A stretch of 64,000 nt of DNA from Trichoplax adhaerens (Eukaryota; Animalia; Placozoa), in the NCBI RefSeq assembly GCF_000150275.1, contig NW_002060964.1, positions 1-64,000 on the forward strand. Direction: 5' to 3'. Within the stretch, counting starts at the first letter, position 1. Every line of letters begins with the position of its first letter. Of the stretch, positions 3,975 through 60,483 are shown piece by piece. The notes below the pieces were generated by a model, which ran no database searches, was not told the DNA's origin, and was given only the letters and a program-made list of their open reading frames with translations. Made by a program: the position numbers and the translations under genes.

Positions 3975-4192
3975 TACGGTACAGTACTGTACTGTACAGT
4001 ACACTGTACTGTACACTGTACAGTACTGTACACTGTAGGGTACAGTGCAGAGTACTGTACCATGTTCTGTACTGTACACTGTACACTACACCAAGTCGGA
4101 TCATATGATCAAACTTTGATTGGCGGTCAAAATTCAAATTTTGACCGCTCACAACTAGATTCCTGAACACTACAGTACAGTGCTGTACTGTA
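3975..4192. repeat. (TACAG)n/(CTGTA)n pentamer array in TADA2A-KIF22 divergent intergenic region
   Basis: TACGGTACAGTACTGTACTGTACAGTACACTGTACTGTACACTGTACAGTACTGTA... at ~3975-4090, plus TACAGTACAGTGCTGTACTGTA at ~4171-4192. Confidence 0.9.
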
Positions 4193-4339
4193 AGTAAAGT
4201 GCGGTACGGTAGGTTGGAAGAGTGCCTTTTGGATTGGATTAAGCAGCAAAATCGAATTTTGGTCTTGATTGGTTCACTTCGACACCCAATACTGTTTCAT
4301 TAGCTACCTACTTTGCCAAAATATAAAGCAATTCATTGG
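4119..4339 (+). promoter_or_regulatory. Putative KIF22 cell-cycle promoter: clustered CCAAT boxes plus CHR/E2F-like sites
   Basis: ATTGG at 4119, 4233, 4268 and 4335, CCAAT at 4286. TTGGCGG and TTCAAA (CHR TTTGAA on minus) lie at/within a 12-bp-arm inverted repeat at 4123-4148. Confidence 0.5.
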
Positions 4340-4879
4340 TATAACTACTTTCGGATCAAGTCAATTTCATGAGTATACTGTACAGTGAATGCCTTAATCA
4401 GTTATCTGCTGATCAGTTATATTACTGTGCAATGCTCGGTATTAATTAGCTATAAAATATAGTATACAGTAATCGTAGATCGATCGATTTAGGGTTCGGG
4501 TTATTTATCGTCTTCAAGATTGCTGTACTGGTGACTCTGTGGTGAGTGAGCAAATCTTGTCGTTGTCATAGTTTTCTATAAATGCTATTTCGTACTACAT
4601 GTTGGTTCGAGTAGTGAGAGAGGAGCTATTATAAAACAGAAATCAGGCTGTACATTCTGTACATTGCTTCGGTATGCATCACAAACAATATTATAATATG
4701 TATGCGAACTTATTTATTCATGGTCACTTAGTCCATTAGCAGAAGAGAGCTAAGGATGGGCTGCGCCAGCTCTTTATCTAGTCTCTTAACTCGTTCACTT
4801 TGTACAGTATTAGCTAAATTATAGCATAACCAATTGAACTAACTTTAGCTATGATCAATTTTACAGATAAACTAGAAAC

Positions 4880-7800
4880 ATGGCATCTGTCCAAGTTGTT
4901 CTTAGAGTTAGGTCATCAATAGATGATGAATCACCACTAAGGATTTGTGACGACAATCAAACAGTTGATTTATGGAATTATAGATACGACGATACAATTC
5001 GCTTCAAGTTCGTATTACATAATAAGTAATAGAATTCAATGCGGTAATAGTTAAGATTTACAATTAATAATGATGAAATGATTAAGAACACTCCAATTCA
5101 GCTTCAGTGCATCTTGTTTACGAGTACTCGAGTTCCCGAAACTTTGGTTTTCTCATTAACACTGCAATGATTGATGACTTAATAAATTACGACTATTTTT
5201 AGGTTTGATCGATGTTACAACAGCGATTGCGATCACCAAGAGATCTTTCAAAGATCTATTCAACCCTTACTAAATCACGTTTTCGACGGTCACAATGTCA
5301 GCATTTTTACCTATGGAGCAACAGGATCTGGTATTGAAACAGTACAGTAGAAACAAATCGATTGATGTTACTGATGTTAATTGTAACCCATGCCGATTTA
5401 TCATAAAATCATACTATTTCATTGATACTTTAAAACTTTTCACGTAGGCAAAACGTATACCATGATAGGAAATGAAAGTGATCCGGGTAATATGCCTAGA
5501 AATACCTGTAACAGTAATTTTACCATGTATAAATGAACTGAAATGAAGGCTATAACGGCTAACCATCATTAATTATTTAATTATCGTCACTATAAAAATC
5601 CTACTGCTACGTGCAGCTTGTCTATAGGAAAGTATTGCGCCTATGTTGATACTGCATGTAATAACGAAACAGCTAGAGACAATTAAATCCTTTCTTTATT
5701 AGCTCTCCTATTCTTTATTAATTAAATTACCTGATATTGTTTGTAGCTATGATAGCTAATATTATTGATTAATCTATCTATATAAATCAAGTACACTTTC
5801 CTTATATTTCTTTAGGCTTAATCCCCATGGCAGTTAATGAGATTTTTTCTTATACCTCTAAACAACATAAGTTACATAAAAACTGGAAATATAATATTAG
5901 CATGTCGTACCTTGAAGTTTATCAGGAGAAGGTAACTACGTAGTTTTCTGCAGTAATGCAAGATAAATTTTAACCGATTGGATTCTACTACAATATAGTA
6001 TCATAGATTGCTTAGCATAAATATTGAATAATCACAGTCCACAGTTTCAGTTGTAGAAAAATTTTACTTGTCAAAAACCTCATACATCTCCGTTAATCAT
6101 AAATTTAAAGTCCTTGCAGCTATGTCTAACCCTAAAATTTCTAATGTAGATTTTATTGAATTTAATAATGCAAAATTGATAGATTTACGACCTCATAGCC
6201 AGTGGAAACAAAGATTTAAATTTATATCAAAACAAATCTGGTAAAATTGTTGTCGGTGACTTAGCAGAGTCAGCAATATGTAGTTTTGAAGAATTTTGCA
6301 AAGTCTTTATGAAAGGTAACAACGGCAGGTTAGTAGTATTGTACATACTAGCCTAAATTAAGATAAAATACAAAGTCAACGACAGGCTAAATTACCTTAT
6401 TAATGTAAGCTAGAAGCTCGTGGCTCGTTGGTTATAAAATACTTTCATTAACAGAGTTATGGTATTGTTCATTAAAAATTCATAATTATTTAACTGCTTA
6501 ACTTCTCTTATTATTTAGGAGAGTAGCAGCAACAAAACTCAACCGCCAGTCGAGTCGAAGTCATTCCGTATTGCTACTGAAAGTACTGTATCTAACTAGA
6601 TATTTCTAGCAGCAGTTACTTCATCGTTTAATATTCTTCTCTTTCACTACTGAATCGGAATATATTTGTGATGTGCTAGATAGTAATTACAATTGATTGT
6701 GTTTCTACAGGTTGAAAAAACGGATAATTCTACATTAGAGCGATTCAATAGTAAAGTATACTTAATTGATTTAGCTGGATCGGAAGATAATAGGAGAACT
6801 GGCAATAGTGGAGAAAGGTTGTGCTCTTAATTATACTTGTGACTTACAACATCTCTGTTAGTTAGGATATTACATATCGATACACCACATCGAATAATTA
6901 TAATTGCATAATTCATGTTGCTTTATCTCATTACCATGTTGTTATGTAAAATAGATTAAAAGAAAGCGGGACTATCAATTCATCGTTGTTTGTATTGGGA
7001 AAAGTTGTTGAAGCTTTAAATCAGCAACTGGTGAGATTATCAATGTAATCATTTTTATTCCAGAACTTCTTCGTATGACACAACACCTTTCAATCAATTT
7101 CATCGCTATTTTAAAAACTTTTATATTGTTTTAATCTGTACAAAATGTTTACATTGACCATGTGTGTTGTATTTATATTCATAATTATGAATTGTAGGCT
7201 AGGATTCCGTATAGGGAGAGTAAGTTAACTCGACTTCTACAGGTGAGCGATCTTGTAAATATATGCCTAGTAGGTAAGCGAGTGTTATGCGAGTGAATAC
7301 TAATACGCGTATAATTATAATTGTGGATATCTGGATAGGATTCCATTGGCGGTAGTGCGCATTCTTGCATCATAACTACTGTCTCTGCCAGCAAATCAGA
7401 TTACTACAGCACCTATCATACACTCCAATTTGCATCGAAATCCAGAAATATTATAAATAAACCTTTTGCTCAGATTGAAAACATCAAGCCACGTCATGAT
7501 TTGTCAGAAACAAGAAAGCGTCGAATTTCCACGGCAGAGGATGATAAAAATAATAAAGTATGTGATCAAATTGCTTTTATATTAATTATATCTTGTGTAA
7601 TGCTTTGATCACCTACTGTATTATGTTTCTTGTAATAAAATTATTTTAAAAACCCAGAAAAAGAAATCTTCCGAAATTGTTCATATTGAACACGAAATTG
7701 TAAGTATTATATTTTACAGCAGCGTTTGTATTTAATCATATCTTGGTCTTGGTGCTGATAATCAATCAACTGCAGCAAAAAATTTATGATATTTTTGAGA

Positions 7801-9234: not shown

Positions 9235-9484
9235 ACCTATGCCAGAGCGATAAAGTCCAAATGATAAAGGATTTATTACTCCTCAAAATACCCCCATTTA
9301 TGGACTCCCTAAAAATACTACCTACTGTTCAATATGTAGTAAATTGGATCAAATTATGTAATATATTTATATTACTAGGCAGTTCATCAGCCTTTTAATT
9401 TAAAATTGCAGAAGAAGGAAGTCGCTGTAATACCTTAGAGTGTCATACTTTAGCATTGAGTCTTACATATATCATGAATTCTTA

Positions 9485-15127: not shown

Positions 15128-15261
15128 ATCCACTAAAAATGAGATTATTGGAAAGGAGAATGACTGCTAGACATGATAGCCACTCTTGCAAGTTGACATG
15201 GAGTGGAGGCTCAGTCGCAGGAAATGGCTTGAGATTGGTCCAAACTCTATTCTACTAGTCG

Positions 15262-15328
15262 ATACAGTACTACAGTACTGTACATTGTGCACCAAGCCTA
15301 GCCAACAGTACAGTACAGTACTGTACTA
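15262..15328. repeat. (TACAG)n/(CTGTA)n array in ZDHHC-HIRA divergent intergenic region
   Basis: ATACAGTACTACAGTACTGTACA and ACAGTACAGTACAGTACTGTAC, about 135 bp upstream of the ZDHHC ATG. Confidence 0.85.
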
Positions 15329-25350: not shown

Positions 25351-26842
25351 CTAAACTGGCTACAGTAATGAAACTTCAGTGAAATCTTTTTTTGTAACGG
25401 AACTAAAACCAAATTATCATTAGATGATCTTTGAGATATACAAGTATTTTGTATGAATTTAATTATTATTGTAACATTTAGACTCCACTGAGGAGTGAGT
25501 TACGATTCATCTGTGCATACTACATTACTGTACTTACCATTAAATAGATACGATAAACTACCCATATTATGTTATAGTTCTCTTGTCGGTACTCAAATCG
25601 TAACTGGAAACTGTTGCATACCATTGTTGTAAAGCTCTTAGTCGCAAAATTATTTCATGCTATAATATCTTTTGTGACAGATGCGTCAGGTTATTAACTC
25701 AATCTAGTAATCCTATGATAAGGATTATAAAGATTGTACATGATATTGCTGAAACTAAATTTTGCCTAACTCTGATACTGTAATATACAACGTTAGAATA
25801 TCACTTTGCTGTTGATCTAATCTATAGTGCCTGACACATCTAATATCGGTTACCATAAAGGTTATATGAGAGTGCAGGTAATTGCCGTTTTGTATTTTAA
25901 TTATATTGTACTGTTAAAATATTTCTTTTATATAATATTTCGAGCTTCTACTGTCCTATATTATTATCCTATATGACGACAACATTGTTTATCTGCGTGT
26001 CATTTCACCAATCTAAAGTCAATAAAATTTTGTGGTACCTTAATGCCTAGTATCAAAATACATTCTCCTAGTATATTTGAACTTGCAGTTCGATGTGAAT
26101 AGTATTTTTTACTAGTCTACGCTATATTTGTTACTTAACCCAATGGTTCATGAACTTCTATATTCTGTAATATGCCAGCAGATGCTGGAATCCCGCCTAA
26201 AATTAATCAATACGTGTAACTCCAAGACTTACAGCGTACATTATAATACTAGCTTTAGATGACACTGTGATGGATTATATGTCACTTGTAAGAGTTTATA
26301 CAATTCGGATTTTAACGTGTCATTTCGACGCAGTCATGATGTTGTTGCTGCAATTTACGTTGTTAAATAAAGTACTTTTATTGTTGTTTCCTTTCGTAAT
26401 TACTTTAATTGTTGCACGTGTAAATGGCCCTAAATTTATAATAAATAGAGACCACTATGCGAATTGAAAGATTCATTTGCATTGGCTATGGGCAATTATC
26501 CAATAAAAGAAAAATCTTTTTATTGAGTAGGCGCAGTATGTAGCCTAAACAGTTCTTAGCGCCGAGTCCAAATCATTTAATTTATGCATACCTACTATTA
26601 ATAGATTAATAGATATCATCATATGTACTGTACCTGAGATTAGATTATTTATTGTTTTGTTTTAGTAGTCAAGTACAATAGTACGTACACGGCAGTAGCG
26701 GATGCATAGTGTAAGTCCTATAACTCTGATAGTATTCAGGAACCCGCGCAAAATCAAGCTGAAAATAGATCACAGTTAATAACTGGCAGTATTGTATCGA
26801 TATTTGATAACTGCAAGCTTAATTACTTGGTAACAACTCAAA

Positions 26843-28180
26843 ATGGCTCGCGCTGTCGTTTTACTCATTGCTGCTTTGTGCATCACCAACAGCTTTGCTG
26901 CTGTTAATTTTACCTATCATCATTATCCTGAAATGATAGCATTTATGCGGCAAACTCAAGCAAAGTATCCCAGTATTACGTATTTATACAATTTAGGCAA
27001 AAGCGTACAAAATCGCGATTTGCTAGTAATTGCTATTGGCGAGCAACCGAATGTACACACGCCTGGACGACCAGAATTCAAATATGTTGGAAATATGCAT
27101 GGGAATGAAGTTGTTGGACGTGAAATGCTCATCCATCTAATCGACCTTCTAGTAGAAGGATACACCAATAACGACGCAGAAATACGAAATCTGCTTAAAA
27201 CGACAAGAATTCATATTTTACCTTCGATGAATCCTGATGGTTTTGAAGCATCCTATGAAGGTAATTGTACTGGTGTTATTGGTCGCCGAAATGCCAATAA
27301 CGTCGATTTAAATCGAAATTTTCCTGATCGTTTCGTTGCAATAAATACACCAATTCAACCTGAAACACAAGCAATCATCACTTGGTTGAAACAGGAACAT
27401 TTTGTTTTGTCGGCTAATTTACATGGAGGTACTGTCGTTGCCAATTATCCCTACGATAGTTTGGCACCTTCCGTTACACCCAGAAATACATACAGTATGG
27501 CACCTGATGATGATATTCTTATCCAAATTTCTAAAGCTTATTCGGATAATCATGGCTATATGCATATCGGCCGACCAAATTGTTCTAGCAGTCCTAATGA
27601 ATACTTCGCTGATGGAATCACTAACGGTGCAGCCTGGTATTCTATTGATGGTGGAATGCAAGACTATAACTATGTTGATTCGGAATGTTTCGAAGTGACT
27701 CTTGAAATTAGTTGCTGTAAATATCCAACAGCAGATCAACTACCCTTTTTTTGGCAAGCTAATAAAAATGCTTTAATGGCGTATATGAAATCAGTTCATA
27801 TGGGCGTTAAAGGATTTATCTTCGATCAAAATCGAGTTGGCATTTCCAACGCTACGATCAATGTCGTTGGTCGAAACTATAGCGTCTCTTCTAGTGTTGC
27901 TGGAGACTATTGGCGTCTACTAATCCAAGGTACCTATTCGCTAACTGTTTCTGCTCCGGGTTACAGAACAGCAACCAAAACTATTACTATTCCAACCAAT
28001 ACTCAAGCAGTTCAAGTGAATTTTACGTTACAGAGTGCCGCAACAAGCACCATGAATACTATGGGAACGGCTACAACAAAGGCTTCTACCGTGGGAACAA
28101 TTAACTCTGCTCTTAATTTACAAGCAAATTCAGTTTTATCGATGTTCATTATAGCAATAACCGTTTTGATGGCATGGTAA
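26843..28180 (+). CDS. M14B metallocarboxypeptidase, carboxypeptidase M-like, intronless CDS, predicted signal peptide and GPI-type tail (copy 1)
   Basis: 445 aa ORF with PEFKYVGNMHGNE (Zn ligands), DLNRNFPD, SANLHGG, MQDYNY, catalytic EISCCKYP, transthyretin-like GDYWRLL domain, S/T stalk and hydrophobic C-terminus. Confidence 0.95.
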   Translation: MARAVVLLIAALCITNSFAAVNFTYHHYPEMIAFMRQTQAKYPSITYLYNLGKSVQNRDLLVIAIGEQPNVHTPGRPEFKYVGNMHGNEVVGREMLIHLIDLLVEGYTNNDAEIRNLLKTTRIHILPSMNPDGFEASYEGNCTGVIGRRNANNVDLNRNFPDRFVAINTPIQPETQAIITWLKQEHFVLSANLHGGTVVANYPYDSLAPSVTPRNTYSMAPDDDILIQISKAYSDNHGYMHIGRPNCSSSPNEYFADGITNGAAWYSIDGGMQDYNYVDSECFEVTLEISCCKYPTADQLPFFWQANKNALMAYMKSVHMGVKGFIFDQNRVGISNATINVVGRNYSVSSSVAGDYWRLLIQGTYSLTVSAPGYRTATKTITIPTNTQAVQVNFTLQSAATSTMNTMGTATTKASTVGTINSALNLQANSVLSMFIIAITVLMAW

Positions 28181-32209: not shown

Positions 32210-34340
32210 CATCATTGAGTCGGAATAGAGATAAAATAATCGATGTAAAAATGACAAGACTTTACAAACGGCAATGATATCAATTCTCTTCGATTCTAAT
32301 GGTCTTAGCATGATTGAATCTGCACAAGTAGAACAGAGCTTGTACAATTTAACTGATGCATTTTGCTAACATCGTACCGTCGGAATGTTGCCAATAAATT
32401 GCGACTATCTTATAACCCAGTTGGATTAAAGCCAAAATAGTCGGTGCAAAAGTAAGCCAAATTTTACAAAAAACAATACTGTCAATTCCTTTCGATTCCA
32501 GCCTATGTGTTTGCTGATTGTATTAGTAAGAATGATGCAAATAGACTGTGATCATGTTATAACCAAGTTGGAATAGAGGTAAACTCATAAATTAAATTTG
32601 AACCTGGCAAAAAGGAAGAAGCTTTGACGCAAATTTCTATCGATTTTGATTTGGCTGATGCACGTTGTAACTTACGGTGGTCAGTATGTGCATAACTAAG
32701 ATGAAATAGCGCTTAAAGCAGTAGACGTAAAAGTGGCAATATTATAAAGTAAGCAGTAATGTCAATTCCCCTCGATTCTAATTTAGCTTACGCATAGAAC
32801 TTGATTGAAACTGCAAAGATTAGAGTAGATTATAATTTAGCGGATGCATTTTTTGACTAATTAAGACCGTGAGAATGTTGTAAAGAAACTGCGACCAGAT
32901 TATAGCCAAGTTGAATTACCCGCAGCTTTTAAAATAGTGAATGGAAAGTAGAAAAACTTTATAGTAAACGATGATGTTAATTCCTTCGATTCTAATTTAG
33001 TGGATGTATACTGTAGAATATGATTAAAATTGAATGTTACAGTTAATCATAATTGAACTGATGCATTTTCTGACGTAGTACCGTGAGACTATGATAAAAA
33101 GATTGCGACGAAGTTATAACTGAGTTGGTATAGCTGTTAAAGTAATCGATGCAAAATAGTAAAATTTTACTGAAAACAATGACCTTAATTCCTTTGATTC
33201 TAACTTAATTGATACATAGAATAGAGTATGATTAAAACTGTATGGTTAGAGTAAACTATTGTAATTAAACTGCTGGATTATCGAATTACTGTAAGAAGCG
33301 AATTGGAATACCTGTTAAAATAGTAGATGTAAAAATAGCAAAATCTCACTGAAAACAATAACATCGATTTTCCTCAATGCTGTATTGATTTAATTGATAT
33401 TTAGAACATGATTGAAACTGCACGACTAGAGTAGAATATAATTGAACTACTGATTTATCGACTTACTGTAATAAGCGAACTGGAATAGTTGTTAAAGTAG
33501 TAAATGTCAAAATAGCAAAATTTTACTTAAAACAATAATATTGATTTTCCTCTACACTGATTTATTTGATATATAGAACATGATTAAAATTGCTCGATTA
33601 GAGTAGATTATAATCAAACTGCTATTTATAATTATAATTTACCGACTAAATGCAACAACCGAGTAGGAATAGCTGTTAAAGTATGCTTAGAAGATGTAAA
33701 AAAAGCGAAACATTATAGTAAACAATCATGTCAAATTCCATCGATTCGAATTTAATTGATGTAGAGATATAATTAATTGAAAGTGTACTATTACAGTTTA
33801 TTACAATTGAATTGATGACTTGCCGACTTACTATAATAACCGAATTGGAATATCTGTTAAAGTGGTAGATGTCAATATTGCAAAATTTCACTGAAAACAA
33901 TGATGTCAATTTCCCTCGATACAGATTTAGTTGATATATATAGAACGTATTTAAAACCTCGCGATTATAGTAGATTGTAATAGAAATGATACATTTTACC
34001 CACGTAGTACCGTGAGAAGATTGCAAATAGATTGCGACCTGGTTATAACCGAGTTGGAATAGAGATAAAATAATCGATGTAAAATATCGTGATAACAATT
34101 GCCTTCGATTCTAGTTTAATCGACGCATTTGTCGACTTTGTCAAACGATTGTAAGTAGATTGCTACCATATGTATCACCGAGTTGGAATAGGGGCAACAT
34201 GGCTGATGTAAAATAGCAAAACTTTACTCCGTAAACAATAATTTCAATTTCTTTCCATTCTAATTTAACGGATACATTTTGCCGACTTGTTAAATTCGTA
34301 TCGGTCGATGATGGCCTGATTAAAAGTTATAACCCAGTTA
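32210..34340. repeat. Degenerate satellite-like tandem array, ~11-12 units of ~175-220 bp
   Basis: Recurrent blocks ATAACCGAGTTGGAATAG, GATGTAAAAATAGCAAAATTTCACTGAAAACAAT, GTCAATTCCCTCGATTCTAATTTA and ATGATTAAAACTG..GATTAGAGTAGATTATAAT in fixed order. Confidence 0.85.
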
Positions 34341-35989: not shown

Positions 35990-35998
35990 GACGACATC

Positions 35999-37336
35999 AT
36001 GGCTCAATCAGTTCATTTCTGCTTGATGGTAGCAATAGGCTTATTGATGGCAACATCTAGTAGCGCTATTAACTCCACTTATTTCATGTATCATAATTAT
36101 ACAAGTATGACAGCTTTGCTGCAAGATCTCAACCAGAAATATTCTCATTTAACCAAATTGTACAGCATTGGTAAATCGGTCGATGGACGCGATCTTAACG
36201 TCTTGGCCATTAGTGCTAATCCTGATCGACATGTACCGGGCCAGCCTGAATTTAAATATGTCGGCAATATGCATGGCAATGAAGTGATTGGTCGTGAACT
36301 GTTATTATATTTGTCTGTCCATTTATTGGAAAGTTATGGTACCGATAATGAAATTACTTGGTTGTTAGATAATACTCGAATTCACATTTTGCCTTCTATG
36401 AATCCTGACGGTTTCGAAATGTCCTATGAAGGCAATTGTACTGGTGTTCTTGGACGATATAATCGCAATGGTGTAGATCTCAATCGTAATTTCCCCGATC
36501 AGTATATTCCAGTGAAAAATCTATCCCATCCATTACAGCCAGAAACAATTGCTGTCATGCAATGGATACAAAGTTTACCATTTGTTTTATCAGCTAATCT
36601 TCACGGTGGAACGGTTGTTACTGTCTATCCTTATGATAATCTACCATCCAATTATACCGATCGAACCACGTATAATCGATGTCCTGATGATGAACTCTAT
36701 CGTACCATTAGCAAAATTTATTCCTATGCGCATCCTACCATGCATATCGGCATGCCCAACTGCACTGTGAATGATACCGAGTATTTCAAAGACGGCATTA
36801 TTAATGGCGCCGCATGGTATGCTATTCAAGGAAGCATGCAAGATTATAATTACTTGCAATCCAATTGCTTTGAAACCACGATCGAAGTATCGTGTTGCAA
36901 ATATCCAACTAGTGACCAATTACCTCAATTTTGGCAGCGTAATCAAAAATCATTGATTCAATATATTAAAGCAGTTCATATGGGAGTCAAAGGCTTTGTC
37001 CTTGATTCTCAAGGCAAGCCAATTTCCAATGCTACCATTACCGTCCGTGGCAACTCTCATACAGTCATCTCGGCTAAAGATGGCGATTATTGGAGGCTGT
37101 TAGTGCAAGGAAAGCATACTATCGATGTGACTGCTTCTGGCTATGTTAAAACTACTCAATTAATTGAACTTTCCAGTAATAGCGAGGTGACAGTCGTCAA
37201 TTTTACTCTACAAGCCGTCACAGCAACACAAGCAACTGTTCCAGTGACTGCTTCAACTGGACAGGGTTTTACCATCCAGTCCAATCTCTATCTTATAGCT
37301 TTACTTTTGACCTCTTTAGTCGGTTTTATTTTCTAG
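35999..37336 (+). CDS. M14B metallocarboxypeptidase, carboxypeptidase M-like, intronless CDS (copy 2)
   Basis: 445 aa ORF with PEFKYVGNMHGNE, DLNRNFPD, SANLHGG, EVSCCKYP, GDYWRLL, signal peptide and hydrophobic C-terminus. Clear paralog of 26843-28180. Confidence 0.95.
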   Translation: MAQSVHFCLMVAIGLLMATSSSAINSTYFMYHNYTSMTALLQDLNQKYSHLTKLYSIGKSVDGRDLNVLAISANPDRHVPGQPEFKYVGNMHGNEVIGRELLLYLSVHLLESYGTDNEITWLLDNTRIHILPSMNPDGFEMSYEGNCTGVLGRYNRNGVDLNRNFPDQYIPVKNLSHPLQPETIAVMQWIQSLPFVLSANLHGGTVVTVYPYDNLPSNYTDRTTYNRCPDDELYRTISKIYSYAHPTMHIGMPNCTVNDTEYFKDGIINGAAWYAIQGSMQDYNYLQSNCFETTIEVSCCKYPTSDQLPQFWQRNQKSLIQYIKAVHMGVKGFVLDSQGKPISNATITVRGNSHTVISAKDGDYWRLLVQGKHTIDVTASGYVKTTQLIELSSNSEVTVVNFTLQAVTATQATVPVTASTGQGFTIQSNLYLIALLLTSLVGFIF

Positions 37337-47900: not shown

Positions 47901-48521
47901 ACATTCGATTAAACCCGACATGTTACTAAAATTTGCTTCCTTACATAGGGCAAGTCTCATATTAATAATACCTTATACGAATATGCGCGATCATCTTTAT
48001 CAATAGACGTACCTTCTACTTCTAAATCAGTTTCCCATCCAGAATCATCGATATCAAGTGAATCGTCATCATCTTCTACAGCAAGATGGGCTTCAACATC
48101 GTGTTCGTCATCCGTGGATTCATTAAAATTCTGTTTCATTGAAAATACATCAAATACGTCAATAACACCACTTGTGTTTAATTACATTGAATGCCAATGA
48201 CAATTTATATTTTGAAGTACAGTACTAGTATCTTGAAAATATTCACTAACAACACTAATCATCGCTTTTTGCAGCATATTATAATAAGCGCAGTCAAAGT
48301 TACCAGCTAATTCAATAGCCTTTCGTTTTTCATGACTGAAAATGAGTTCAACGAATAATATTCCGAAAGACACGATAGGAAAATAATCAAACTATATCGT
48401 CAAGTTTCACTTTTTAAAAGTACACGCTCACTTTTGATTGCCGACCAGACGGGCTATCTTCTTCATTTGATATTTGTAAATGTGTAGTGCGAAAGCTATG
48501 TAGTGAAGATTTCGCCGACAT
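44924..48521 (-). CDS. LRRC74A: LRRC74-family RI-like leucine-rich-repeat protein with C-terminal EF-hand pair and RS-rich tail
   Basis: DSGWETDLE, YIEACRLMKVTPVSFF, VDLKHHGLGAAGAKAIAITLV, 28-aa LRRs (LDLSWNAFRRTGA), EF-hands DKDKSMSITRDEF and DKDGDGEINFSEL. A vs B paralog cannot be resolved; first exon ATG 48521 is inferred. Confidence 0.85.
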
Positions 48522-48554
48522 CTTGACACCAAGTAATTAATTATAACTGCTGTT

Positions 48555-48568
48555 GTTGTCATGGCAAC
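48555..48568. promoter_or_regulatory. RFX X-box
   Basis: GTTGTCATGGCAAC, a near-perfect palindromic X-box 34 bp upstream of the LRRC74 ATG. Confidence 0.8.
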
Positions 48569-52000: not shown

Positions 52001-52184
52001 TGTGCCTGCAGTTGGAGATATGAATGGGACAGCGATCAGTTTACTCAGATATCAATTACTGTACTTATCAGTGAAATAAAGTTCATTTTCACACACCTCT
52101 ACACAAATATCAACACAAGTAGTTGCTTCTTGGCCTTTTAATCCGTCTATTAAGAACGTCTCTACAAATTTACTCCACCATCAT

Positions 52185-52250
52185 GGTCGCCATATACGCC
52201 GAAAAACTTGCCAATCACTGTGGATTATATCTTTCAAGCCAGCCAATGTT
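52185..52250 (-). promoter_or_regulatory. Putative RAD9 promoter: two CCAAT boxes 32 bp apart plus E2F-like site
   Basis: CCAAT at 52211 and 52243; CGCCGAAAAA at ~52197 (TTTTTCGGCG on minus). Confidence 0.45.
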
Positions 52251-52284
52251 AGAAGTGGCTAGAATACAATTCGAGTCAGTGACT

Positions 52285-52875
52285 GAATTTGGTAGGCAAT
52301 GGCAGAATTTCAAGGGCAATCATTCACAGTGAAATGACCTAGAATAGAGTGGCAGTCTAAGCTTAACTATTGCTATAAAATATGCTAGAACTGAATGATA
52401 TCCTAAAGTAAGCTTGAATTGGTTATGAAATAAACTGGAATTGAATGAAGGTCTAACCTTGAATTTGTTACGAAATGAGCTGAATTGACTGGCAGTCTAT
52501 GCTTGAATTTGCGATGAAATGGGCACAGTGAAATGGCCGAGAATAAAATGATAGTCTGAAATTGAATTTTGCTATAAAATACGCTAGAATTGAATGACAA
52601 CCCAAGGTGAGTTTGAATTAGCTATGAAATTGACTGGAATTGAATGATAGTCTAACCTTGAATTGGCTACGAAATAGGCTGGATTGATTGGCAGTCTATG
52701 CTTGAACTTGTAGTGAAATGGACTGGAATGGAATGGCAATGAACTAGGCTGGAATTGAATGGCAGTCAGTACTTGAAATTGCAGTGAAATGGGCTGGATT
52801 GGAATAGCGGTCGATGCTTGAATTGGCTATGAAATGGACTGGAGTGGAATAGCAGTCTAAGCTTGAATTTGCGGC
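52285..52875. repeat. ~45-bp minisatellite, about 12-13 units
   Basis: Consensus approx. TTGAATTGGCTATGAAATGGACTGGAATTGAATGGCAGTCTAAGC; unit starts at ~52413, 52458, 52502, 52612, 52657, 52701, 52772, 52817 and 52862. Confidence 0.9.
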
Positions 52876-52997
52876 CAATGGCGATCACTGCCGGTCAAGC
52901 TGAAATGGAAAGTAAGAAGTTTGTGGTTACTATGGATATGAAATGACCGATCATGTTCGTTCTTGCATACCGCAACCTGAGGCTGCAAGGCAAACGA

Positions 52998-53150
52998 AAT
53001 ACAGTACAGTATAGTACCGGTACTGGTCTACTGTCTAGTGGTAGTTAATACCGTACAGTACAGCACTGTCATGGAGCTGCAGATATCGTACTGTACTGTA
53101 CACTGTACACTGTACAGTTCGTGGTTGGAGTACTGTACTGTACCAGTACT
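52998..53150. repeat. (TACAG)n then (CTGTA)n array upstream of CCDC86
   Basis: TACAGTACAGTATAGTAC...GTACAGTACAG...GTACTGTACTGTACACTGTACACTGTACAG...GTACTGTACTGTACCAGTACT. Confidence 0.9.
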
Positions 53151-53182
53151 TCAGCATTCAACGGATTGCTTTGACGTTCAAA

Positions 53183-54879
53183 ATGGCTGGAAGCGATATT
53201 CAAGTTGGTGAGGAGAAGCACAATCATGCTGTCAGAGGAAGACGGAAATCGGGACGCGTTTGGAAAGAGCAACATGCCAGGTAGAATACTTCGTTAATCT
53301 TGATGTGAATTTGAACTTTATTGGGAAAGGAGACGGTACATTAGGTAGCATAGCACTTGAGCAGCTCAAGCTTGTAAGATGCACTTTACTACTGGAAGTG
53401 TGCAGCGGATTTTTACCTGGACGATATGGGGATTACATGTAATAGAATCCGATGTTGGTATAGGGATGGAAAGAAGATTGCATGACGGTCAATTTCTAAA
53501 TAATTTGTGGCAATGTAGAGATAGAATTTAGTATTGTACTCGTAGACTTGATGCAAAGTGATATTATAACAGGTAGTGCACAGATACTAGTACGAAAGCG
53601 ATGCATTTTTCATCTGTGTGATAGTAGTATAAAGATGGAGACAACATTTCCTCTCGATCTGTTCCTAAAGAATAGGTCGTAGTGTAGAGATAGGGTTTAG
53701 TCTCGTGTAGATTTGATGTAAAGTGGCCTACTGTACGTGATAGCTTCGTTGCTCGCCATACCTTTAAAATGGATAGCTTAGAGTAAGAGGGATGGAAGGG
53801 AGTACTGGATAACTCAAATTTGAGCGCATACTCATTATACGATAAAATCTCAACAGGAGCAACGCAAAAATGAATGTCAAGCCCTTGCGTTCATCCTGGA
53901 AGGCGAAAATGAATAAGAAATTAACTAACCAATCCATTAAAGATTTTGAGAGAGAGCTTAAAGATACCGACCGAAAAGCAAAGGAAGTAAGTTCATGAAC
54001 TAGTAACTGACATTTAAATCATTCCAATGTAACAGCTATATGATTGATAAAGCTCGTTAGCGTCATAAGCTAATTAAATCAATCGTTCCTCTGGCAAAAT
54101 TTTCTGATTGATTATATTTGTCATCCAATATCTGGATTTCAAATCAATTCCCTCCAGCATTGAACTGAAACCATTCAACAGGAATCCTAGCTATTCTCTC
54201 AGTTTATCTTGCGTAGTGATCAGAATTTTAGTGTGGCAGCTAGCTGCTCTTTACAAGTAATCGCTATCATAAGCTACATACGTATATGTTATCAGTTACT
54301 ATCGTTTGCGGATGCATATAAGAAACTGGGAACCAATCTTTTGAATATATAGTATGGAAATATATATATATATATACTGTGCGTGTATATAGCTACTAGT
54401 GGTCTATTTCTGGTACAGCGTATCAGTTCATATCAGTACAGACTCCTCAAACCTTAGCTATTTAATACATTCCAAATATAACAGAGGCAGTCATTTTGCT
54501 GTCCAGTTGGTCGAGATGAATACTACGTTGAATAGACAGTAGTCACGACTATGATAACTACGGAACATATTCTAATCTAGGAGAAAAGACTAATCATGGA
54601 GGCCAGGAAAAAGCTCAAGGAAGAAAATGCTAGAAAGGCAGAAATCGTGCAAGTGGTAAATAGACTATATTTTGTAAAATTTACAGCAACTATATCCATC
54701 GTTTTGCAATACTGTAGATAATTCATTATCACAGAAATACTATAAATTATGTCATTGCTTGAAAGAATGTGATATGTATCTTATAAAGTAACCTTTATTT
54801 CATTGAATAATAGATTACTAAATCCAGCACACTGAAGAAAATGAAGAAAAAACATTTAAAAACTATCAGAATGGGATAA
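53183..54879 (+). CDS. CCDC86: Coiled-coil domain protein 86 (Cgr1 family, nucleolar), 4 exons
   Basis: RGRRKSGRVWKE, KPLRSSWKAKM, KLKEENARKAEIVQVITKSSTLKKMKKKHLKTI*. Confidence 0.9.
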
Positions 54880-55107
54880 ATAGATATTTTACTATTAGAA
54901 TAACATACGATTTACTTAATCAGTGCAATGTACATAACAGTGTAAAGCACCCTGATTATCCGTTATTGTTACGATTGGGCAACAATGTCTTTGGATATTT
55001 ATATAAAGTATGTGAAAATTGATGAGGATTTTTTAGATATTATATACAATTGTAAAAGATAATAGTATGACAATCATGGCAGTCAATATAATACGTTTTT
55101 ATAAGAC

Positions 55108-56127
55108 TCATTCCTTATCATGGCTGTCGTAATGCTCCACTAACTTTGAATAAACCACATGTGATACACCTGTAATTAGTGTTTGATTTAAAAATTCTAA
55201 TACTAATTGCACGATAGGCCATTTTGCATCGCTGATATCATGATTACCGTTGGCCATCCATGTTTGCAACAATACAATCATTTCTATCGGGAAAATTTTG
55301 ATGATATCTCTCGCTGGAGGGAGATCATCGATGCAATGAATATGCCTAGATTTAAAACTATCAACAACGCCATTTACATCTGGTTGCATAGTATGAAATA
55401 CTTTGCCTATCCATTCACAATAGGACTGTAGAGCTGACTTTTGGTCATTTTTGTTCACAATATTGTTAGCATAATCAATCATTACCTTCCAAGGAATTTC
55501 TTCCCACTTTTGCTGATAGAATAATACTAAGGTAGCAACGAGAACTTTCTCTAGTGTATTCATTGCTATGCTAGGGATAGAGAGGTTTAACTTAGAGCAT
55601 ATATCTTTAACGATAGCGTCAATAAATGATGTTATATTATCAGGACGTGTATAACTTGCTTCAACATTACTATTCCGAATTGGACTGGAGCCAATCTGAT
55701 CAGCTGGTATGAGTTGGACATGTAGATCTTGAGTCAGAGATAGATCATGCTCTCTAGCCAGCCATGTATCCTGTAAACTTATTAATATAGATTTTTGACA
55801 ACTTCTGGACAAGAGTTCGAAGGCTGCTTTAAAGACACCTTGAATACTATAAAACCATACACCATTGGAGGTCCCACGGATGCCTTTGATGCTTATATTA
55901 TCCATGGTTAACTTAGTTGCTAGACCCTCTTTTGCATAATTTGAATGAACTCGAGGTAAATTCTCTGTTCTGATGCTGGATGATTTTAATACATCAGCAC
56001 CCAAGTATAATGGAATACATTGGCTGTCTTCTATCAACATCGTACTTACATATTGATATTTTATCAAGTAGATTACGCGAAGCTGCAGAGTACCTACATC
56101 GATTGTTGCTAAACTAATTCTATTCAT
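55108..56127 (-). CDS. Unidentified ~339-aa protein, single coding exon
   Basis: >1 kb open frame in AT-rich DNA with globular-protein composition. First ATG at 56127; the frame is open to 56196, where an AG acceptor lies. Family not recognised. Confidence 0.8.
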   Translation of the reverse strand: MNRISLATIDVGTLQLRVIYLIKYQYVSTMLIEDSQCIPLYLGADVLKSSSIRTENLPRVHSNYAKEGLATKLTMDNISIKGIRGTSNGVWFYSIQGVFKAAFELLSRSCQKSILISLQDTWLAREHDLSLTQDLHVQLIPADQIGSSPIRNSNVEASYTRPDNITSFIDAIVKDICSKLNLSIPSIAMNTLEKVLVATLVLFYQQKWEEIPWKVMIDYANNIVNKNDQKSALQSYCEWIGKVFHTMQPDVNGVVDSFKSRHIHCIDDLPPARDIIKIFPIEMIVLLQTWMANGNHDISDAKWPIVQLVLEFLNQTLITGVSHVVYSKLVEHYDSHDKE

Positions 56128-56713
56128 AGCAGAGCGTTCAATGTCTGCTAGGGAATGAGTAAAAATTTGTAACTCTTTCTCTTCCAGATGTGCCACTATT
56201 GGTCAGTCGGTCTCGCCTTGAATCTTCAATATACAGTACACTATGCAGCACGGGCGTGGGTATACATAACTTACTCTCGAATTAATTCTTACAAGGCTTG
56301 TAGGGCCTTGTAGATATTATTAAGTGCAACAACTTTCAACTATGCTTATCATTATTCCATCCAGTTAGCAATAGCCTCGCTCTCTAGCAATCTACAACCT
56401 GTATTTTCTATAGAATTTGGACTTCTAAACTACAGCACAGTAGTGTTTTGAATTAACCTATCGTCGATGTTGATTGATTCAAAGCTCACTGTATAGTCGT
56501 CGAGAATCCAAAGTCAGTAAAAGAACAAGCAGCAATTGTCAATTTGTCACTGCAGTTATTAACAATTATCTAACATGCAGTACTCGATTTACTGCAGAAG
56601 TCCATCCTTCTGGACTGCTGTACACAGGGACTAGTCTGGAGAACGGTTCGGTTCGGTTCAATACCTTTACGATCTACTATATATCAGGGACTAAAAGGAG
56701 AGACGGCGTAATA

Positions 56714-56735
56714 CCGTACTGTACTGTACTGTACG
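56714..56735. repeat. (CTGTA)n array upstream of TXNDC17
   Basis: CCGTACTGTACTGTACTGTACG, about 120 bp upstream of ATG 56853. Confidence 0.8.
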
Positions 56736-56852
56736 CTAATGCCACAAGCACTTGCGCAGTTGGAGGTCCCTAACTGATTAGAGTCTCTGTCTGTTTACTG
56801 TGTTCAGGGCCCCCACTTTACCTTTCTAATACGCTCGGTTTCCTAGACAATC

Positions 56853-58719
56853 ATGGCGAGACTAGCGGTCGTAGGCCTTAAGGAGCTTTTACAAGTTATT
56901 GCAGAGAACAAGAGCCGTTACACGACAATTTTTGTCAAATATTACGGAGATTATGATGATCATGGCCTTAGTTGGTGTCCAGATTGTGTAAAAGGTAAGT
57001 TACATGCTAATACTGGAGGATCGAAGCTTTTGCAGGCATGTTACAGTGAATGACAGTATTCTTAACATGTTCTAGTCAAATAGATCGTGGCTTGGTTGAA
57101 ATATTGCTCTCCACTCAAATTGAACTCTGTGTACGATAATTAGATTAAACTATTAGTCACATTGCTATAGGAAGTCGTTGCTATTCTATCGCTCCACAGT
57201 AAGCTTTACTTTAAGTATATAAATGATATTTTACAGAACTAATTAGCTAATTATCTTACTCGAAATACTGCACTCTCTTACTATTCTTCTCCATCCAAAG
57301 TCATACTAATAACTCACTAATAGCACTCATTTTTGAGTAGGACAGAGATTTAGTAGTCCTTGACTGTACGTATCATAGTGCAAACGCATTCAGTAGCTTT
57401 ATCTTATTGATGAATTGAACTTCATTACATGATCAGTTAAAAACGTATTTCGACAAAGTAACCTTGTCTATCAATGCCATCATAAATTTGTATGTTGATT
57501 TCGTACTATAGAGCTTCGTCATTTGTTAAAGGGTATCGAAATTAAGCTGTATCTGTAAATAGTATGACGCTAATTTTGTCATCAGTTAAAGGATATCAAA
57601 ATTAAGCTGTATCTGTAAATAGTATTATACCGAACAGGTGCTTTACTTGTAAGCATGATCTGTTCTACTGACCAGAGGACAAAGTAGAGTACATTGCTCT
57701 TCTGAGTTCTTCTAGCAGCTGCCACTCTAGTGGCGGCCTAGAAATACACTTCTATGCTAATTTAACTTAGGATCGCGACTACTACTACGAAAAATGATTG
57801 ACAATAATTAATTACAATATTAGACGTTGTACAAATCGAAATAAATGATACTAATGACTATGTTTGGTAAATACATTCCATTTAGCTGAACCCATTATCG
57901 ACAAAATTTTCAGTGAACTGAAGGATAACGTGCTGTTAGTTTCCTGTGCTGTTGGAGACCGACCAAAGTACAGTATTAAACTTTCAATTTTTATAATGGC
58001 TTTTAACTTAATCCATAGATATGTAGTCACATACACGAGACATTTAAAAGTTTTTAATCAATGATTCTTTCAACGTTAATTGAAGAGGGTAATGTAACAC
58101 AGAATTCGACGTCAATGTGTATCATGCGTCAGCGTTAACATCAATTTATATATGAACATTAATTGTTATCATGATTAAGGTGGAAAGATCAAGAGAATGA
58201 ATTTAGAAAACATGAAATCATTCAGCTGAAGTCTATTCCAACCTTAATCGAATGGGGAACTGTAAGATATTTTACTTGAATTAATAAAATAAAATACATG
58301 GAGATGAACTAACAAACAACGCCGTGATTGCACAGTTATATTACATTATGACAATAGTAAGTAACAGTCCGTCGATTTTAAGCGTTAATTCCTTCACTTA
58401 ATTCTGCACATGAAAAGTATGGTAAAAAATTAACGATAGATGAATAATTTCGTTCAGTGTTACAGACAATTTGTAATTGCTATAGCATATCCATAGAATG
58501 TATGACATTAATGCCGCATAAAATAAGACAGTAATTACAAATGCATAGGTATTTTGTTTACATGAAGTCGTTATGAGGTCAATATAAAATGAAGGGATTA
58601 GAAAGATCCCGTATAACCTAAAGTAGTTTAATTTCAAGTTTTCATTTATTTTACAGGATCGTACGGTAATTGAAGAAGATTGTCGAGATGAAAGCCTAGT
58701 TAAACAGTTTTTTCGATTA
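56853..58719 (+). CDS. TXNDC17: Thioredoxin-related protein of 14 kDa (TRP14), 4 exons
   Basis: GLSWCPDCVKAEPII active site, VGDRPKWKDQENEFRK, LKSIPTLIEWG; TAA ends 58719. Confidence 0.95.
57518..57625. repeat. 60-bp-period tandem duplication in TXNDC17 intron 1
   Basis: GTCAT..GTTAAAGG.TATC.AAATTAAGCTGTATCTGTAAATAGTAT occurs twice, 60 bp apart. Confidence 0.9.
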
Positions 58720-58851
58720 AAGTAGTTTCTTGCAAGGTCCTGGTTATGGCGATTTAAAAATTCAACTAGTCGTCTTATTTGGAACATAGTTAATTACATA
58801 GTTATTGCATAGCGTTATCATGAGTTGGCAATATCTTGTGCTTGTTCACGA

Positions 58852-59736
58852 TTAATCTTCCTTACTGATATCTCCATGTTTCATTCTTGCGATGCTTTGC
58901 AAAACATCGTCAAATCTTGTCATTTTATCACGTTTACTTCTGTTAGTCATGGAAGTTATTTTAACAGGCCGTAGTAAGTCCTCTTCCGCATCGATATCAT
59001 CGAATATATCAAAGCTACAATAACAAATACGGAGAGATCACGATTGCAATTTGGTATATCTGTTTATGTGACTAATATACTGCGCAAATACGTAAAGTAC
59101 TATAATCGTTAATAAATGCGAGGCTACAAATCTACTGTATATTGATTGGACTGAGTATTAAAACAATCAATCACCGATATTGCTTATAATTTTCAATTTT
59201 ATTGGCATAAAGTGCGTAACAGATACTGTCGCACCGTGGCCATTATTCAATCATAGCAATTTGTCGTACTGTTCGTTGTCTAGCATCTTCTGGTTTACTT
59301 TCAAGTACTGTATACCGTATAGTGATGACGTTTAGAAGTCAATCAGTAAAGTTTGATCCGAATAATACCTCAATAAACGTACAGTATTGTGATCGATAAG
59401 AGTTAAGACCAACGAATCTGTATTACTAGCATTGTTCTGTTAAGCCCAATTCATAGCAAATCTTACTGAGATAAAGAATCTCAATCTTACAAATAGAATC
59501 TTTCAAGCATGCTATACGAACATATCCTACCTACTGCTTTCTTGAATAGTTTGACTTTGGTGCCTGGCCTCTGTTATTAGCTTATTTTGGCCATGACTCT
59601 GATCAGGCTTAGGCTGCTTAGCATTTTGTTTAGGGCTCGGGTATCTACGGGTTAATTCTAATGTACCTTCCTTGTGTATTTTTTCGTATAAAGAGGCTAT
59701 TTCGGTATCGTCCAAACCTTTCAAAGTTTCAGTCAT
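58852..59736 (-). CDS. PAGR1: PAXIP1-associated protein PA1-like, 2 coding exons (59736-59531, 59014-58852)
   Basis: EIASLYEKIHKEGTLELTRRYPSP, SFDIFDD and TRFDDVLQSIAR resemble, in order, the recalled PAGR1 blocks EIQRLYELLAAHGTLEL..RRPPTP, EFDFDD and ARLDKVLSDMKR. Phase-2 splice is in frame. Confidence 0.75.
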
Positions 59737-60365
59737 TTTGATTAATTAACTGGTGGAGTACATTTTATCAAATCAATGCTTGCAAATATCCTAGAGTCAG
59801 CATTCCATGCAGTAGACAATCGTTGATGCTGTTCTATTTCAATGAGTTTAATTTATCTGCTTGCACTTTATTTCTCTTAATTACTTCAATGGCAGGTTCG
59901 CTATGGGGGCCAATAAAAAGGGTACCAAGTAGATCGGAATATTTGCTGGAGATTGTTGTATAAGCACTTGCATATAGTCTGTATGGCTATGTGTTGTACA
60001 CTTGTAGTCTGTAGATTAATTAACGTACTGTACGCCGCGTCATTAATATTATCGAGCTTCGTGCAGTCCACTTGCCAGCTCTCGATCAGTTGCTCCTTCC
60101 GCCTTGAACTACAGAACTTCAATTCACAGAACACCTTGACAAAGATACCATAAAATCTTTAGGGTAACCTGAACATTTTAAATTATAAGTTGAAAGCTTA
60201 CTTCATTATCCGCTAGAGCGTGAAGGTAGAATATTGGACTTACTCAAGATTGGATCATTTCATTAAGAGTCGACTGCCCCACTTGCAACCACAGCCATCT
60301 TGACCATCTCTTTCAAGGTAAAACCGTCCATCTGGTGTTTACGTTTTGAAGCGGCGCGGCACTAT

Positions 60366-60483
60366 TACAGTACAGTACAGTACTGTACACTGTACGCTAC
60401 TGTACTGTACTGTAGTTCCCGCGCAAACTCGGTCCGTACTGTACAGTACAGTACAGTACAGTACAGTACAGTAAGGTACTGTA
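60366..60483. repeat. (TACAG)n/(CTGTA)n array in PAGR1-MKS1 divergent intergenic region
   Basis: TACAGTACAGTACAGTACTGTACACTGTA...CTGTACTGTACTGTA and a run of six TACAG at ~60442-60471. Confidence 0.92.

What the first reader, a model, noticed from the sequence alone, without database searches (positions are those of the whole stretch)
3975..60483. A (TACAG)n/(CTGTA)n array marks all five divergent promoter regions: candidate lineage-specific promoter system
Seen: dense GTAC-core pentamer arrays at ~3975-4192, 15262-15328, 52998-53150, 56714-56735 and 60366-60483, one in each head-to-head intergenic region. They lie ~130, ~135, ~33, ~118 and ~104 bp upstream of the TADA2A, ZDHHC, CCDC86, TXNDC17 and MKS1 ATGs. 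I found no comparable array in the 25-45 kb block or before the carboxypeptidases and LRRC74. The 5-bp period places two GTAC palindromes per helical turn. Inference: a repeat-encoded promoter mark for broadly expressed genes, such as a multivalent TF platform or nucleosome-excluding element, playing a role analogous to CpG islands or GAGA repeats. I cannot verify whether it has been described.
Basis: partly seen in the sequence, partly recalled or inferred. Interest (0 to 1): 0.9.

Follow-up and report, generated by a model that had tools for sequence, protein, structure and literature searches.

The report
Known Trichoplax GTAC-pentamer promoter arrays
The dense TACAG/CTGTA arrays are real and sit between divergently transcribed genes. 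They are the (ACAGT)n promoter repeat of the placozoan Trichoplax, published in 2010, and how they work is still untested.

Summary
Observation confirmed. All 17 matches to three GTAC cores on a 5-bp lattice lie in the five named regions, against 0 expected by chance. Each array lies between a minus-strand gene on its left and a plus-strand gene on its right. The left-hand gene of array 3 is only predicted.

RNA contigs stop 55-132 bp short of arrays 4 and 5 on both sides. That leaves untranscribed gaps of about 230-245 bp centred on the arrays.

The genome (105.6 Mb, 1414 contigs, 34% GC) fits Trichoplax adhaerens. Four-core arrays occur 6758 times genome-wide; the reversed control gives 0.

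This is already published:
- Wang et al. 2010 (PMC2871265) found (ACAGT)n to be the dominant microsatellite, 54% within 1 kb upstream of genes, and proposed it as a TF site.
- A 2026 CNN study (PMC12817080) links repeating ACAGT to insulation.
- Kim et al. 2025 (PMC12221973) describe a housekeeping-promoter loop-anchor motif.

The scan also met this before on other DNA of the same genome (s1-733980), with the same verdict.

New here: the unit is strand-symmetric GTAC+W, arrays are short, and array 1 shows no transposon signs.

Mechanism (inferred): a multivalent protein-binding platform in the nucleosome-free core of broadly expressed promoters.

The parts
3975..4192 (.). Array 1. Main block 3975-4090 (16 GTAC cores) and a second block 4164-4192, separated by a unique spacer 4091-4163 that holds an 11-bp-arm palindrome (4123-4133 / 4138-4148). 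It lies between the TADA2A-like gene (minus, ATG 3844) and a kinesin gene (plus, ATG 4880).
   Evidence: spacer is single-copy in the genome
15262..15328 (.). Array 2. Two short blocks (15262-15283 and 15304-15328) between the DHHC palmitoyltransferase gene (minus, ATG 15127) and a plus-strand gene that starts near 15676 and has WD40 exons further downstream.
52998..53150 (.). Array 3. Four blocks, including a stretch with 7-bp spacing (ACTGTAC x3 at 53095-53116). It ends 33 bp before the CCDC86/Cgr1-like ATG at 53183 (plus). A 44/199-bp minisatellite (52325-52857) lies to its left.
56712..56734 (.). Array 4. The smallest, with four GTAC cores. It lies in the middle of a gap without RNA contigs (56581-56825), between a minus-strand gene (364-aa open frame 55111-56202, RNA contigs reaching 56580) and TXNDC17 (plus, RNA contig from 56826, ATG 56853).
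60366..60483 (.). Array 5. Two blocks (60366-60414 and 60434-60483) filling half of a gap without RNA contigs (60307-60537). It lies between a minus-strand gene (exon 1 at 60242 to about 60306, intron 60133-60241, weak PAXIP1_C match) and MKS1/B9 (plus, RNA contigs from 60538, ATG 60587).
26625..26633 (.). Isolated two-core site 218 bp before the first M14 carboxypeptidase ATG (26843). It is not an array and is listed as a contrast.
48217..48225 (.). Isolated two-core site just beyond the 5'-most predicted exon of the minus-strand EF-hand/LRR gene. It is not an array.

Best explanation
These are the promoter-associated (ACAGT)n arrays already described in the placozoan Trichoplax adhaerens. 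I put that identity at 0.95 or higher. Anatomically they are short runs, usually 3-8 units, of the palindromic core GTAC on a 5-bp lattice. The spacer base is A or T almost at random, there are occasional 7-bp steps (GTAC-ACT-GTAC), and several runs often lie within 100-900 bp. They sit in the untranscribed 230-250 bp core between divergent transcription units of broadly used genes.

Most likely mechanism (inferred, not shown): the lattice is a multivalent binding platform for a so far unidentified GTAC-recognising protein, probably a dimer or oligomer. This protein would keep the promoter core nucleosome-free and could mediate the insulation and promoter-promoter contacts reported from Micro-C. 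In this it would resemble clustered CGATA/BEAF-32 sites, GAGA repeats or yeast general regulatory factor sites. The confidence given (0.5) is for this mechanism, not for the identity.
For: Presence and non-randomness: (17 matches against 0 expected). Genome-wide, 6758 four-core W-spacer sites against 0 for the reversed control.

Position: RNA contigs end 55-132 bp outside arrays 4 and 5 on both sides. ATGs lie 33-135 bp away. Over 173 kb of the same scaffold, 16 clusters were found. None overlaps a predicted coding exon. Seven of 16 are flanked minus-then-plus, against 14% of random positions (p=0.004; map).

The unit behaves like a recognition motif rather than a slippage repeat:
- 88.5% of four-core sites have only A/T spacers.
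- Only 38.5% are pure in one orientation, so neighbouring spacers differ about 38% of the time.
- G/C at the spacer (about 4% per site) is about as rare as a core change (14.4% of interior cores broken, about 3.6% per site).
- Arrays are short: the ratio of five-core to four-core counts is 0.40.

Genes without arrays in the window are two secreted M14 carboxypeptidases and an EF-hand/LRR gene.

Literature: 54% of arrays lie within 1 kb upstream of a gene, with enrichment for translation genes (PMC2871265). Repeating ACAGT was picked out by a CNN as an insulation determinant (PMC12817080). Housekeeping GP1 promoters carry a shared loop-anchor motif conserved in four placozoans (PMC12221973).
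Against: No binding protein is known and none could be tested here. The A/T spacer flips could also arise by strand-switching or hairpin-mediated mutation in a self-complementary repeat, so they do not prove selection on GTAC. All sequencing runs were assembled contigs, so exact transcription starts are not known, and contigs tend to break near repeats. The letters of the motif in Kim et al. appear only in a figure. The 2026 paper attributes ACGG, not ACAGT, to that study, so equating the arrays with the loop-anchor motif is an inference. My exon map comes from a crude codon model that misses small genes.
Confidence: 0.5

Rival explanations
1. The effect is intrinsic to the DNA and needs no dedicated protein. 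The self-complementary, TpA- and CpA-rich lattice would resist nucleosome wrapping or extrude hairpins/cruciforms. Negative supercoiling, which builds up between divergent transcription units, would drive this and keep the promoter core open.
For: Single strands of the arrays fold into long hairpins that are more stable than dinucleotide shuffles: z = -4.6, -3.9 and -3.7 for arrays 5, 1 and 2. Many inverted-repeat pairs with 80-94% complementary arms occur. Every array lies between divergent genes. The 5-bp period puts identical steps on opposite helical faces, so no rotational setting is favoured (geometry, inference).
Against: Array 4 has only four cores (23 bp), too short for a stable cruciform or for excluding a nucleosome, yet it sits in the same kind of gap. 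Array 3 folds no better than shuffles (z = -1.6). G/C spacers are as rare as core changes. That is hard to explain by flexibility alone. No nucleosome or supercoiling data were available.
Confidence: 0.2
2. The arrays are a passive by-product. They would arise and persist in open promoter DNA through slippage, hairpin-mediated strand switching, local tandem duplication, or preferential insertion of a DNA transposon whose ends carry the motif. This is the second option offered by Kim et al. On this view they have no regulatory role.
For: The repeat behaves partly like a satellite. Array-bearing units are tandemly duplicated at scaffold positions 134869-135330 (about 130 bp) and 92480-92900 (about 210 bp). 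Pure one-orientation runs are commoner than random (38.5% against 25%). Two DNA contigs of a related sample differ by 10 gapped letters across array 4 (records 27 and 28). Arrays mimic terminal inverted repeats. Kim et al. report Mutator annotations at these promoters (PMC12221973).
Against: The spacer inside array 1 is single-copy in the genome. I saw no target-site duplications at arrays 1 and 5. The four MULE transposase loci of the genome carry no GTAC arrays in the DNA fetched: 10 kb around one, a whole 6.4-kb contig for another, and the short 1.1-1.3-kb loci held for the other two. Arrays are absent from introns and other intergenic DNA in the window. Kim et al. report a motif conserved at orthologous promoters in four species. 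A CNN needs ACAGT repeats to predict insulation (PMC12817080).
Confidence: 0.2
3. The arrays are clusters of initiator-like start sites. Every unit contains CAGT on one strand or the other, so transcription would begin inside the array in both directions.
For: CAGT is the core of the arthropod/vertebrate initiator (general knowledge). CAGT/ACTG is 4.6-fold enriched in array regions. Wang et al. found ACAGT to be the commonest pentanucleotide repeat in ESTs (PMC2871265). Foreign RNA contigs containing arrays pile up on arrays 4 and 5.
Against: The RNA contigs of all four flanking genes end 55-132 bp away from the array edges, not at them. If transcripts began inside the arrays, the contigs should reach the array border.
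Confidence: 0.05

Closest known systems
(ACAGT)n microsatellite of Trichoplax adhaerens (Wang, Zhang, Meyer & Bao 2010, Biol Direct 5:18, PMC2871265)
   Same: Same unit, same genome size class, same extreme abundance and same position just upstream of genes. That paper already proposed a TF-binding role.
   Different: Nothing essential differs. This report adds three points. The unit is strand-symmetric GTAC+W with near-random A/T spacers. Arrays are short. In this scaffold they sit in the untranscribed core of divergent promoters.
Loop-anchor / GP1 housekeeping promoter motif of placozoans (Kim et al. 2025, Nature 642:1097, PMC12221973) and the repeating ACAGT insulation motif found by the Chimaera CNN (NAR 2026, PMC12817080)
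   Same: Promoters of broadly expressed, linearly clustered genes. A lineage-specific sequence motif. A link to insulation and promoter-promoter contacts.
   Different: The letters of Kim's motif are not in the text held here. The 2026 paper says the motif from Kim is repeating ACGG and lists ACAGT separately. In this genome (ACGG)4 does not occur. GTAC arrays with G/C spacers, which contain ACGG, occur 210 times, so the two may be variants of one lattice. That is an inference. I found no Mutator features at array 1, saw no target-site duplications at arrays 1 and 5, and found no arrays at the MULE transposase loci.
BEAF-32 CGATA clusters, and the DREF and M1BP sites, of Drosophila housekeeping promoters
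   Same: Clusters of a short motif in the core of divergent, broadly expressed promoters that also act as domain boundaries.
   Different: Different motif, a known protein, no strict 5-bp lattice, and no homology implied.
Heat-shock elements (contiguous inverted nGAAn pentamers bound by HSF trimers)
   Same: A modular 5-bp unit used in either orientation in contiguous arrays, with one DNA-binding domain per unit.
   Different: HSEs are inducible, few per genome and have a different sequence. This is only an analogy for how a pentamer lattice can be read.
CpG islands, GAGA repeats and poly(dA:dT) tracts
   Same: Low-complexity promoter DNA that marks constitutive promoters and disfavours nucleosomes.
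   Different: CpG is not enriched here. Sequence and lineage differ.

Membership tests
Trichoplax (ACAGT)n promoter microsatellite (Wang 2010) | Tandem ACAGT/ACTGT units, three or more | tested here: met
Trichoplax (ACAGT)n promoter microsatellite (Wang 2010) | Thousands of copies in a genome of about 100 Mb with about 33% GC | tested here: met
   6758 four-core sites against 0 for the control in 105.6 Mb. Window GC is 33.7%. The organism name itself is coded and is inferred from assembly size, contig number and this repeat.
Trichoplax (ACAGT)n promoter microsatellite (Wang 2010) | Mostly within 1 kb upstream of a gene | tested here: met
   Five of five arrays lie 33-135 bp from an ATG. 16 of 16 clusters in 173 kb lie outside predicted exons and near gene ends. 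The published per-site table is cut in the copy held and does not reach this scaffold.
Placozoan GP1 / loop-anchor motif (Kim 2025) | Sequence of the motif | not testable with these tools
   The motif is shown only in figures. Text and supplements held give no letters.
Placozoan GP1 / loop-anchor motif (Kim 2025) | ATAC and H3K4me3 peak and a Micro-C loop at the promoter | not testable with these tools
   No epigenomic tracks are available here. Only the RNA-free gaps of 232-246 bp around arrays 4 and 5 could be shown.
Placozoan GP1 / loop-anchor motif (Kim 2025) | Motif lies in the terminal inverted repeat of a Mutator element | tested here: inconclusive
   Arrays form inverted-repeat pairs. 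However, I saw no target-site duplication. The inner sequence of array 1 is single-copy. MULE transposase loci show no arrays in the DNA fetched.
Ordinary slippage microsatellite | Head-to-tail identical units in one orientation | tested here: not met
   61.5% of four-core sites contain at least one A/T spacer flip. Steps of 7 bp are common (24 against 115 steps of 5 bp in 173 kb).
MITE / non-autonomous DNA transposon | Dispersed copies sharing internal sequence, flanked by target-site duplications | tested here: not met
   flanks read. Tested for arrays 1 and 5 only.
CpG island | CpG observed/expected above about 0.6 together with high GC and CpG enrichment over background | tested here: not met
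   GC is 41-44%. CpG is only 1.2-fold commoner in array regions than elsewhere.

The most novel reading that the evidence does not exclude
The strand-symmetric GTAC+W lattice is itself the code read by an undiscovered placozoan-specific architectural or general regulatory protein that builds the promoter hubs. The published 'Mutator TIR' association would then be secondary, because self-complementary arrays look like terminal inverted repeats to transposon finders. The ACGG motif would be the G/C-spacer variant of the same lattice.
Probability: 0.3. Interest if true: 0.6.

Novelty: already known. Interest (0 to 1): 0.25.

Why it matters
Placozoans organise about a third of their genes into promoter hubs without CTCF-type loops. 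The sequence that marks those promoters is the obvious handle for finding the protein responsible. That question is open but already posed in the literature. This window adds a clean local example and a sharper description of the unit (a GTAC core, an A/T spacer, a 5-bp lattice, short runs). That description would help in designing pull-down probes and core-mutated controls. It is not a new discovery.

Tried and rejected
1. Exact transcription starts. All 24 runs offered were assembled contigs, not raw reads, so only contig ends could be used.

2. A larger genome sample. 70.8 kb of what was fetched reads N. The wider test therefore rests on 173 kb.

3. GC, AT and purine skew to the left and right of arrays as an annotation-free test of divergent transcription. 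It had no power (p = 0.29-0.41).

4. A codon-usage exon finder. It is usable (82 segments against 5 in the null at score 6) but misses small genes such as TXNDC17 and CCDC86. The minus-then-plus enrichment is therefore an underestimate.

5. A special CCGTAC/GTACGG signature at array edges. Rejected: the edges fade into degenerate TAC-W units, and G/C at position -1 is rarer than background. GTACGG is only 5-fold enriched in array regions.

6. (ACGG)n as a separate tetranucleotide repeat. It is absent from the genome.

7. Matching the arrays to the published per-site table. The stored copy is cut and holds no rows for this scaffold.

8. Spliced gene models were searched exon by exon by reference.
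Full report
**1. What is there.**
Tandem Repeats Finder reports period-5 arrays at each of them, plus derived periods of 7, 12 and 17. The three-core pattern GTACWGTACWGTAC occurs 17 times in the window. All 17 are inside the five regions, and 100 dinucleotide-preserving shuffles gave none. Elsewhere in the window there are only isolated two-core sites. Two of these, at 26625 and 48217, also lie next to gene starts.

**2. Surroundings.**
Single exons searched by reference gave these Pfam matches:
- ZZ_ADA2 on the minus strand to the left of array 1.
- A kinesin motor on the plus strand to its right.
- DHHC on the minus strand to the left of array 2.
- TXD17-like thioredoxin to the right of array 4.
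- B9-C2 (MKS1) to the right of array 5.
- A weak Cgr1 match (CCDC86) to the right of array 3.
- A weak PAXIP1_C match on the minus strand to the left of array 5.
- Two complete M14 carboxypeptidases at 26843 and 35999 that have no array.

Reading the frames gives ATGs at 3844 (minus), 15127 (minus), 53183, 56853 and 60587. The kinesin ATG is at 4880. I did not build or search joined spliced proteins.

**3. Transcripts.**
Only assembled contigs of public runs were available. Laid on 54650-60649, they gave the following.
- Left of array 4: contigs of the minus-strand gene reach 56542 and 56580.
- Right of array 4: the TXNDC17 contig starts at 56826.
- Left of array 5: the minus-strand gene has an intron at 60133-60241 (CT..AC), and its first exon reaches about 60306.
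- Right of array 5: MKS1 contigs start at 60538 and 60570.

The arrays therefore sit in the middle of gaps of 246 and 232 bp that no local transcript contig covers. Contig ends are not transcription starts, and contigs break near repeats. However, they end 55-132 bp from the array borders rather than at them. Hundreds of foreign contigs pile onto the arrays (depth 18388 in the DNA run), which shows how widely the repeat is dispersed.

**4. The genome.**
The window is the start of a 1.10-Mb scaffold of an assembly of 105,631,681 bp in 1414 contigs, with 33.7% GC. From memory, that matches the first Trichoplax adhaerens assembly. The organism names in the tools are coded, so this is an inference. 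The repeat itself strengthens it.

Genome-wide counts:

| Pattern | Count |
|---|---|
| Four cores, A/T spacers | 6758 (reversed control 0) |
| Four cores, any spacer | 7632 |
| Four cores, pure in one orientation | 1250 + 1349 |
| Five cores, A/T spacers | 2688 |
| Five units, free middle core | 3139 |
| Three cores, G/C spacers | 210 (control 2) |
| (ACGG)4 | 0 |

**5. What these counts say.**
- 88.5% of four-core sites use only A or T as spacer.
- Only 38.5% are pure in one orientation, so neighbouring spacers differ about 38% of the time, not far from random.
- G or C at a spacer (about 4% per site) is about as rare as a change in a core position (14.4% of interior cores, about 3.6% per site).
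- The ratio of five-core to four-core counts is 0.40, so arrays are short with a roughly geometric length distribution.
- In 173 kb, GTAC-to-GTAC steps of 5 bp occur 115 times and steps of 7 bp 24 times, mostly GTAC-ACT-GTAC. Seven other tetramers used as controls (six of them palindromic) gave 0-3.

The repeating unit is therefore best written GTAC+W on a 5-bp lattice with occasional +2 shifts. That looks more like clustered recognition sites than like a slippage microsatellite. Strand switching in a self-complementary repeat could also produce the flips, so this is not proof of selection.

**6. Wider sample.**
70.8 kb of that reads N. In the usable 173 kb there are 16 clusters with three or more GTACNGTAC hits, about one per 11 kb.

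A codon-usage exon map (82 segments against 5 in a Markov null at score 6) shows no cluster overlapping a predicted exon. Seven of 16 clusters are flanked by a minus-strand exon on the left and a plus-strand exon on the right, against 14% of random positions (p = 0.004). The map misses small genes, so clusters that are in fact divergent were scored otherwise; arrays 3 and 4 of the window were both scored minus/minus. By eye, nearly every minus-to-plus switch in the map carries a cluster and no plus-to-minus switch does. Large clusters contain local tandem duplications of array-bearing units.

**7. Transposon question.**
Kim et al. tie their promoter motif to Mutator terminal inverted repeats. 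Here the arrays do form many inverted-repeat pairs, for example 29-nt arms 160 nt apart in array 1 and 28-nt arms 72 nt apart in array 5. Their single strands fold into hairpins more stable than shuffles (z = -3.7 to -4.6 for three of four).

Against a transposon origin:
- I saw no target-site duplications at arrays 1 and 5.
- The 81-bp sequence between the two blocks of array 1 is single-copy in the genome.
- The four MULE-transposase loci of the genome show no GTAC arrays in the DNA I could fetch.

A transposon finder could take self-complementary arrays for TIRs. I could not test that.

**8. What is known.**
- Wang et al. 2010 (PMC2871265) reported that pentanucleotides are the commonest microsatellites in Trichoplax and that 78% of them are ACAGT. 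54% lie within 1 kb and 85% within 5 kb upstream of a gene. The associated genes are enriched for translation and protein modification. The paper suggested a TF-binding role.
- Kim et al. 2025 (PMC12221973) found 2,978 GP1 housekeeping genes in promoter hubs. These share a loop-anchor motif that is conserved at orthologous promoters in four placozoans and lies in Mutator TIRs. The motif letters are only in figures.
- The Chimaera study (PMC12817080) found repeating ACGG and ACAGT as insulation determinants in T. adhaerens and attributed ACGG to the transposon of Kim et al.
- The scan itself met the same arrays on another piece of this genome, and a follow-up there reached the same verdict (s1-733980).

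**9. Mechanism.**
Shown:
- Position in the RNA-free core of divergent promoters.
- Genome-wide abundance.
- The GTAC+W anatomy.
- Absence from the promoters of two secreted carboxypeptidases.
- No CpG enrichment.

Inferred: a multivalent platform for a GTAC-recognising protein that keeps the core open and mediates insulation or promoter contacts (0.5).

Rivals:
- A purely structural effect of the palindromic lattice under the negative supercoiling expected between divergent genes (0.2).
- A functionless by-product of mutation or transposon targeting in open chromatin (0.2).
- Initiator-like start-site arrays (0.05). The contig ends disfavour this.

**10. Verdict.**
Novelty: already known. The open part is which protein, if any, reads the lattice. 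That needs experiments that cannot be run here.

Noticed in passing
window 52325-52857: A compound minisatellite (units of about 44, 71 and 199 bp, 75-83% matches) directly to the left of array 3. It fills most of the space towards the next minus-strand gene.
   Followed up: no
window 4123-4148 and 4116-4124, 4236-4240, 4266-4272: A perfect 11-bp-arm palindrome lies inside the single-copy spacer of array 1. Three ATTGG (reverse CCAAT-box-like) pentamers occur in the same intergenic region.
   Followed up: partly
window 26843-28180 and 35999-37336: Two intronless paralogous M14 carboxypeptidase genes (445 aa each, with a CarboxypepD_reg domain) lie in tandem on the plus strand. Neither has an array. 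A 177-bp tandem repeat lies between them at 33262-33629.
   Followed up: partly
window 56640-56795: In the DNA run of the second organism label, two contigs cover array 4. One is collinear and one has 10 gapped letters. Their depths (41 and 33) add up to roughly the single-copy depth. This could be a heterozygous length variant of two pentamer units, but the tool output does not give the place of the gaps.
   Followed up: no
window 58401-58793 / 58657-59018: A joint 58261 to 58657 (GT..AG) joins the plus-strand TXNDC17 transcript to sequence that overlaps the 3' part of the minus-strand neighbour. The two genes therefore seem to overlap tail to tail, or the contigs merge them.
   Followed up: no
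window 60296-60307: The two ATGs in exon 1 of the minus-strand gene to the left of array 5 share a frame that stops after 12-15 codons, within the same exon. The real start codon may therefore lie in exon 2, with a short upstream ORF.
   Followed up: no
G000:C1393:134869-135330 and 92480-92900: Array-bearing segments of about 130 bp and about 210 bp are locally duplicated in tandem. Some promoter clusters therefore grow by minisatellite-like duplication.
   Followed up: partly
G000:C1393:172720-243534: A 70.8-kb run of N in the fetched scaffold. It is either an assembly gap or withheld sequence.
   Followed up: no
G000:C1329:10632-10871 (L011, L012): A MULE transposase domain lies inside a 401-aa open frame without stops. 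It is a possibly intact or domesticated Mutator-type gene and a speculative candidate reader of TIR-like motifs.
   Followed up: no
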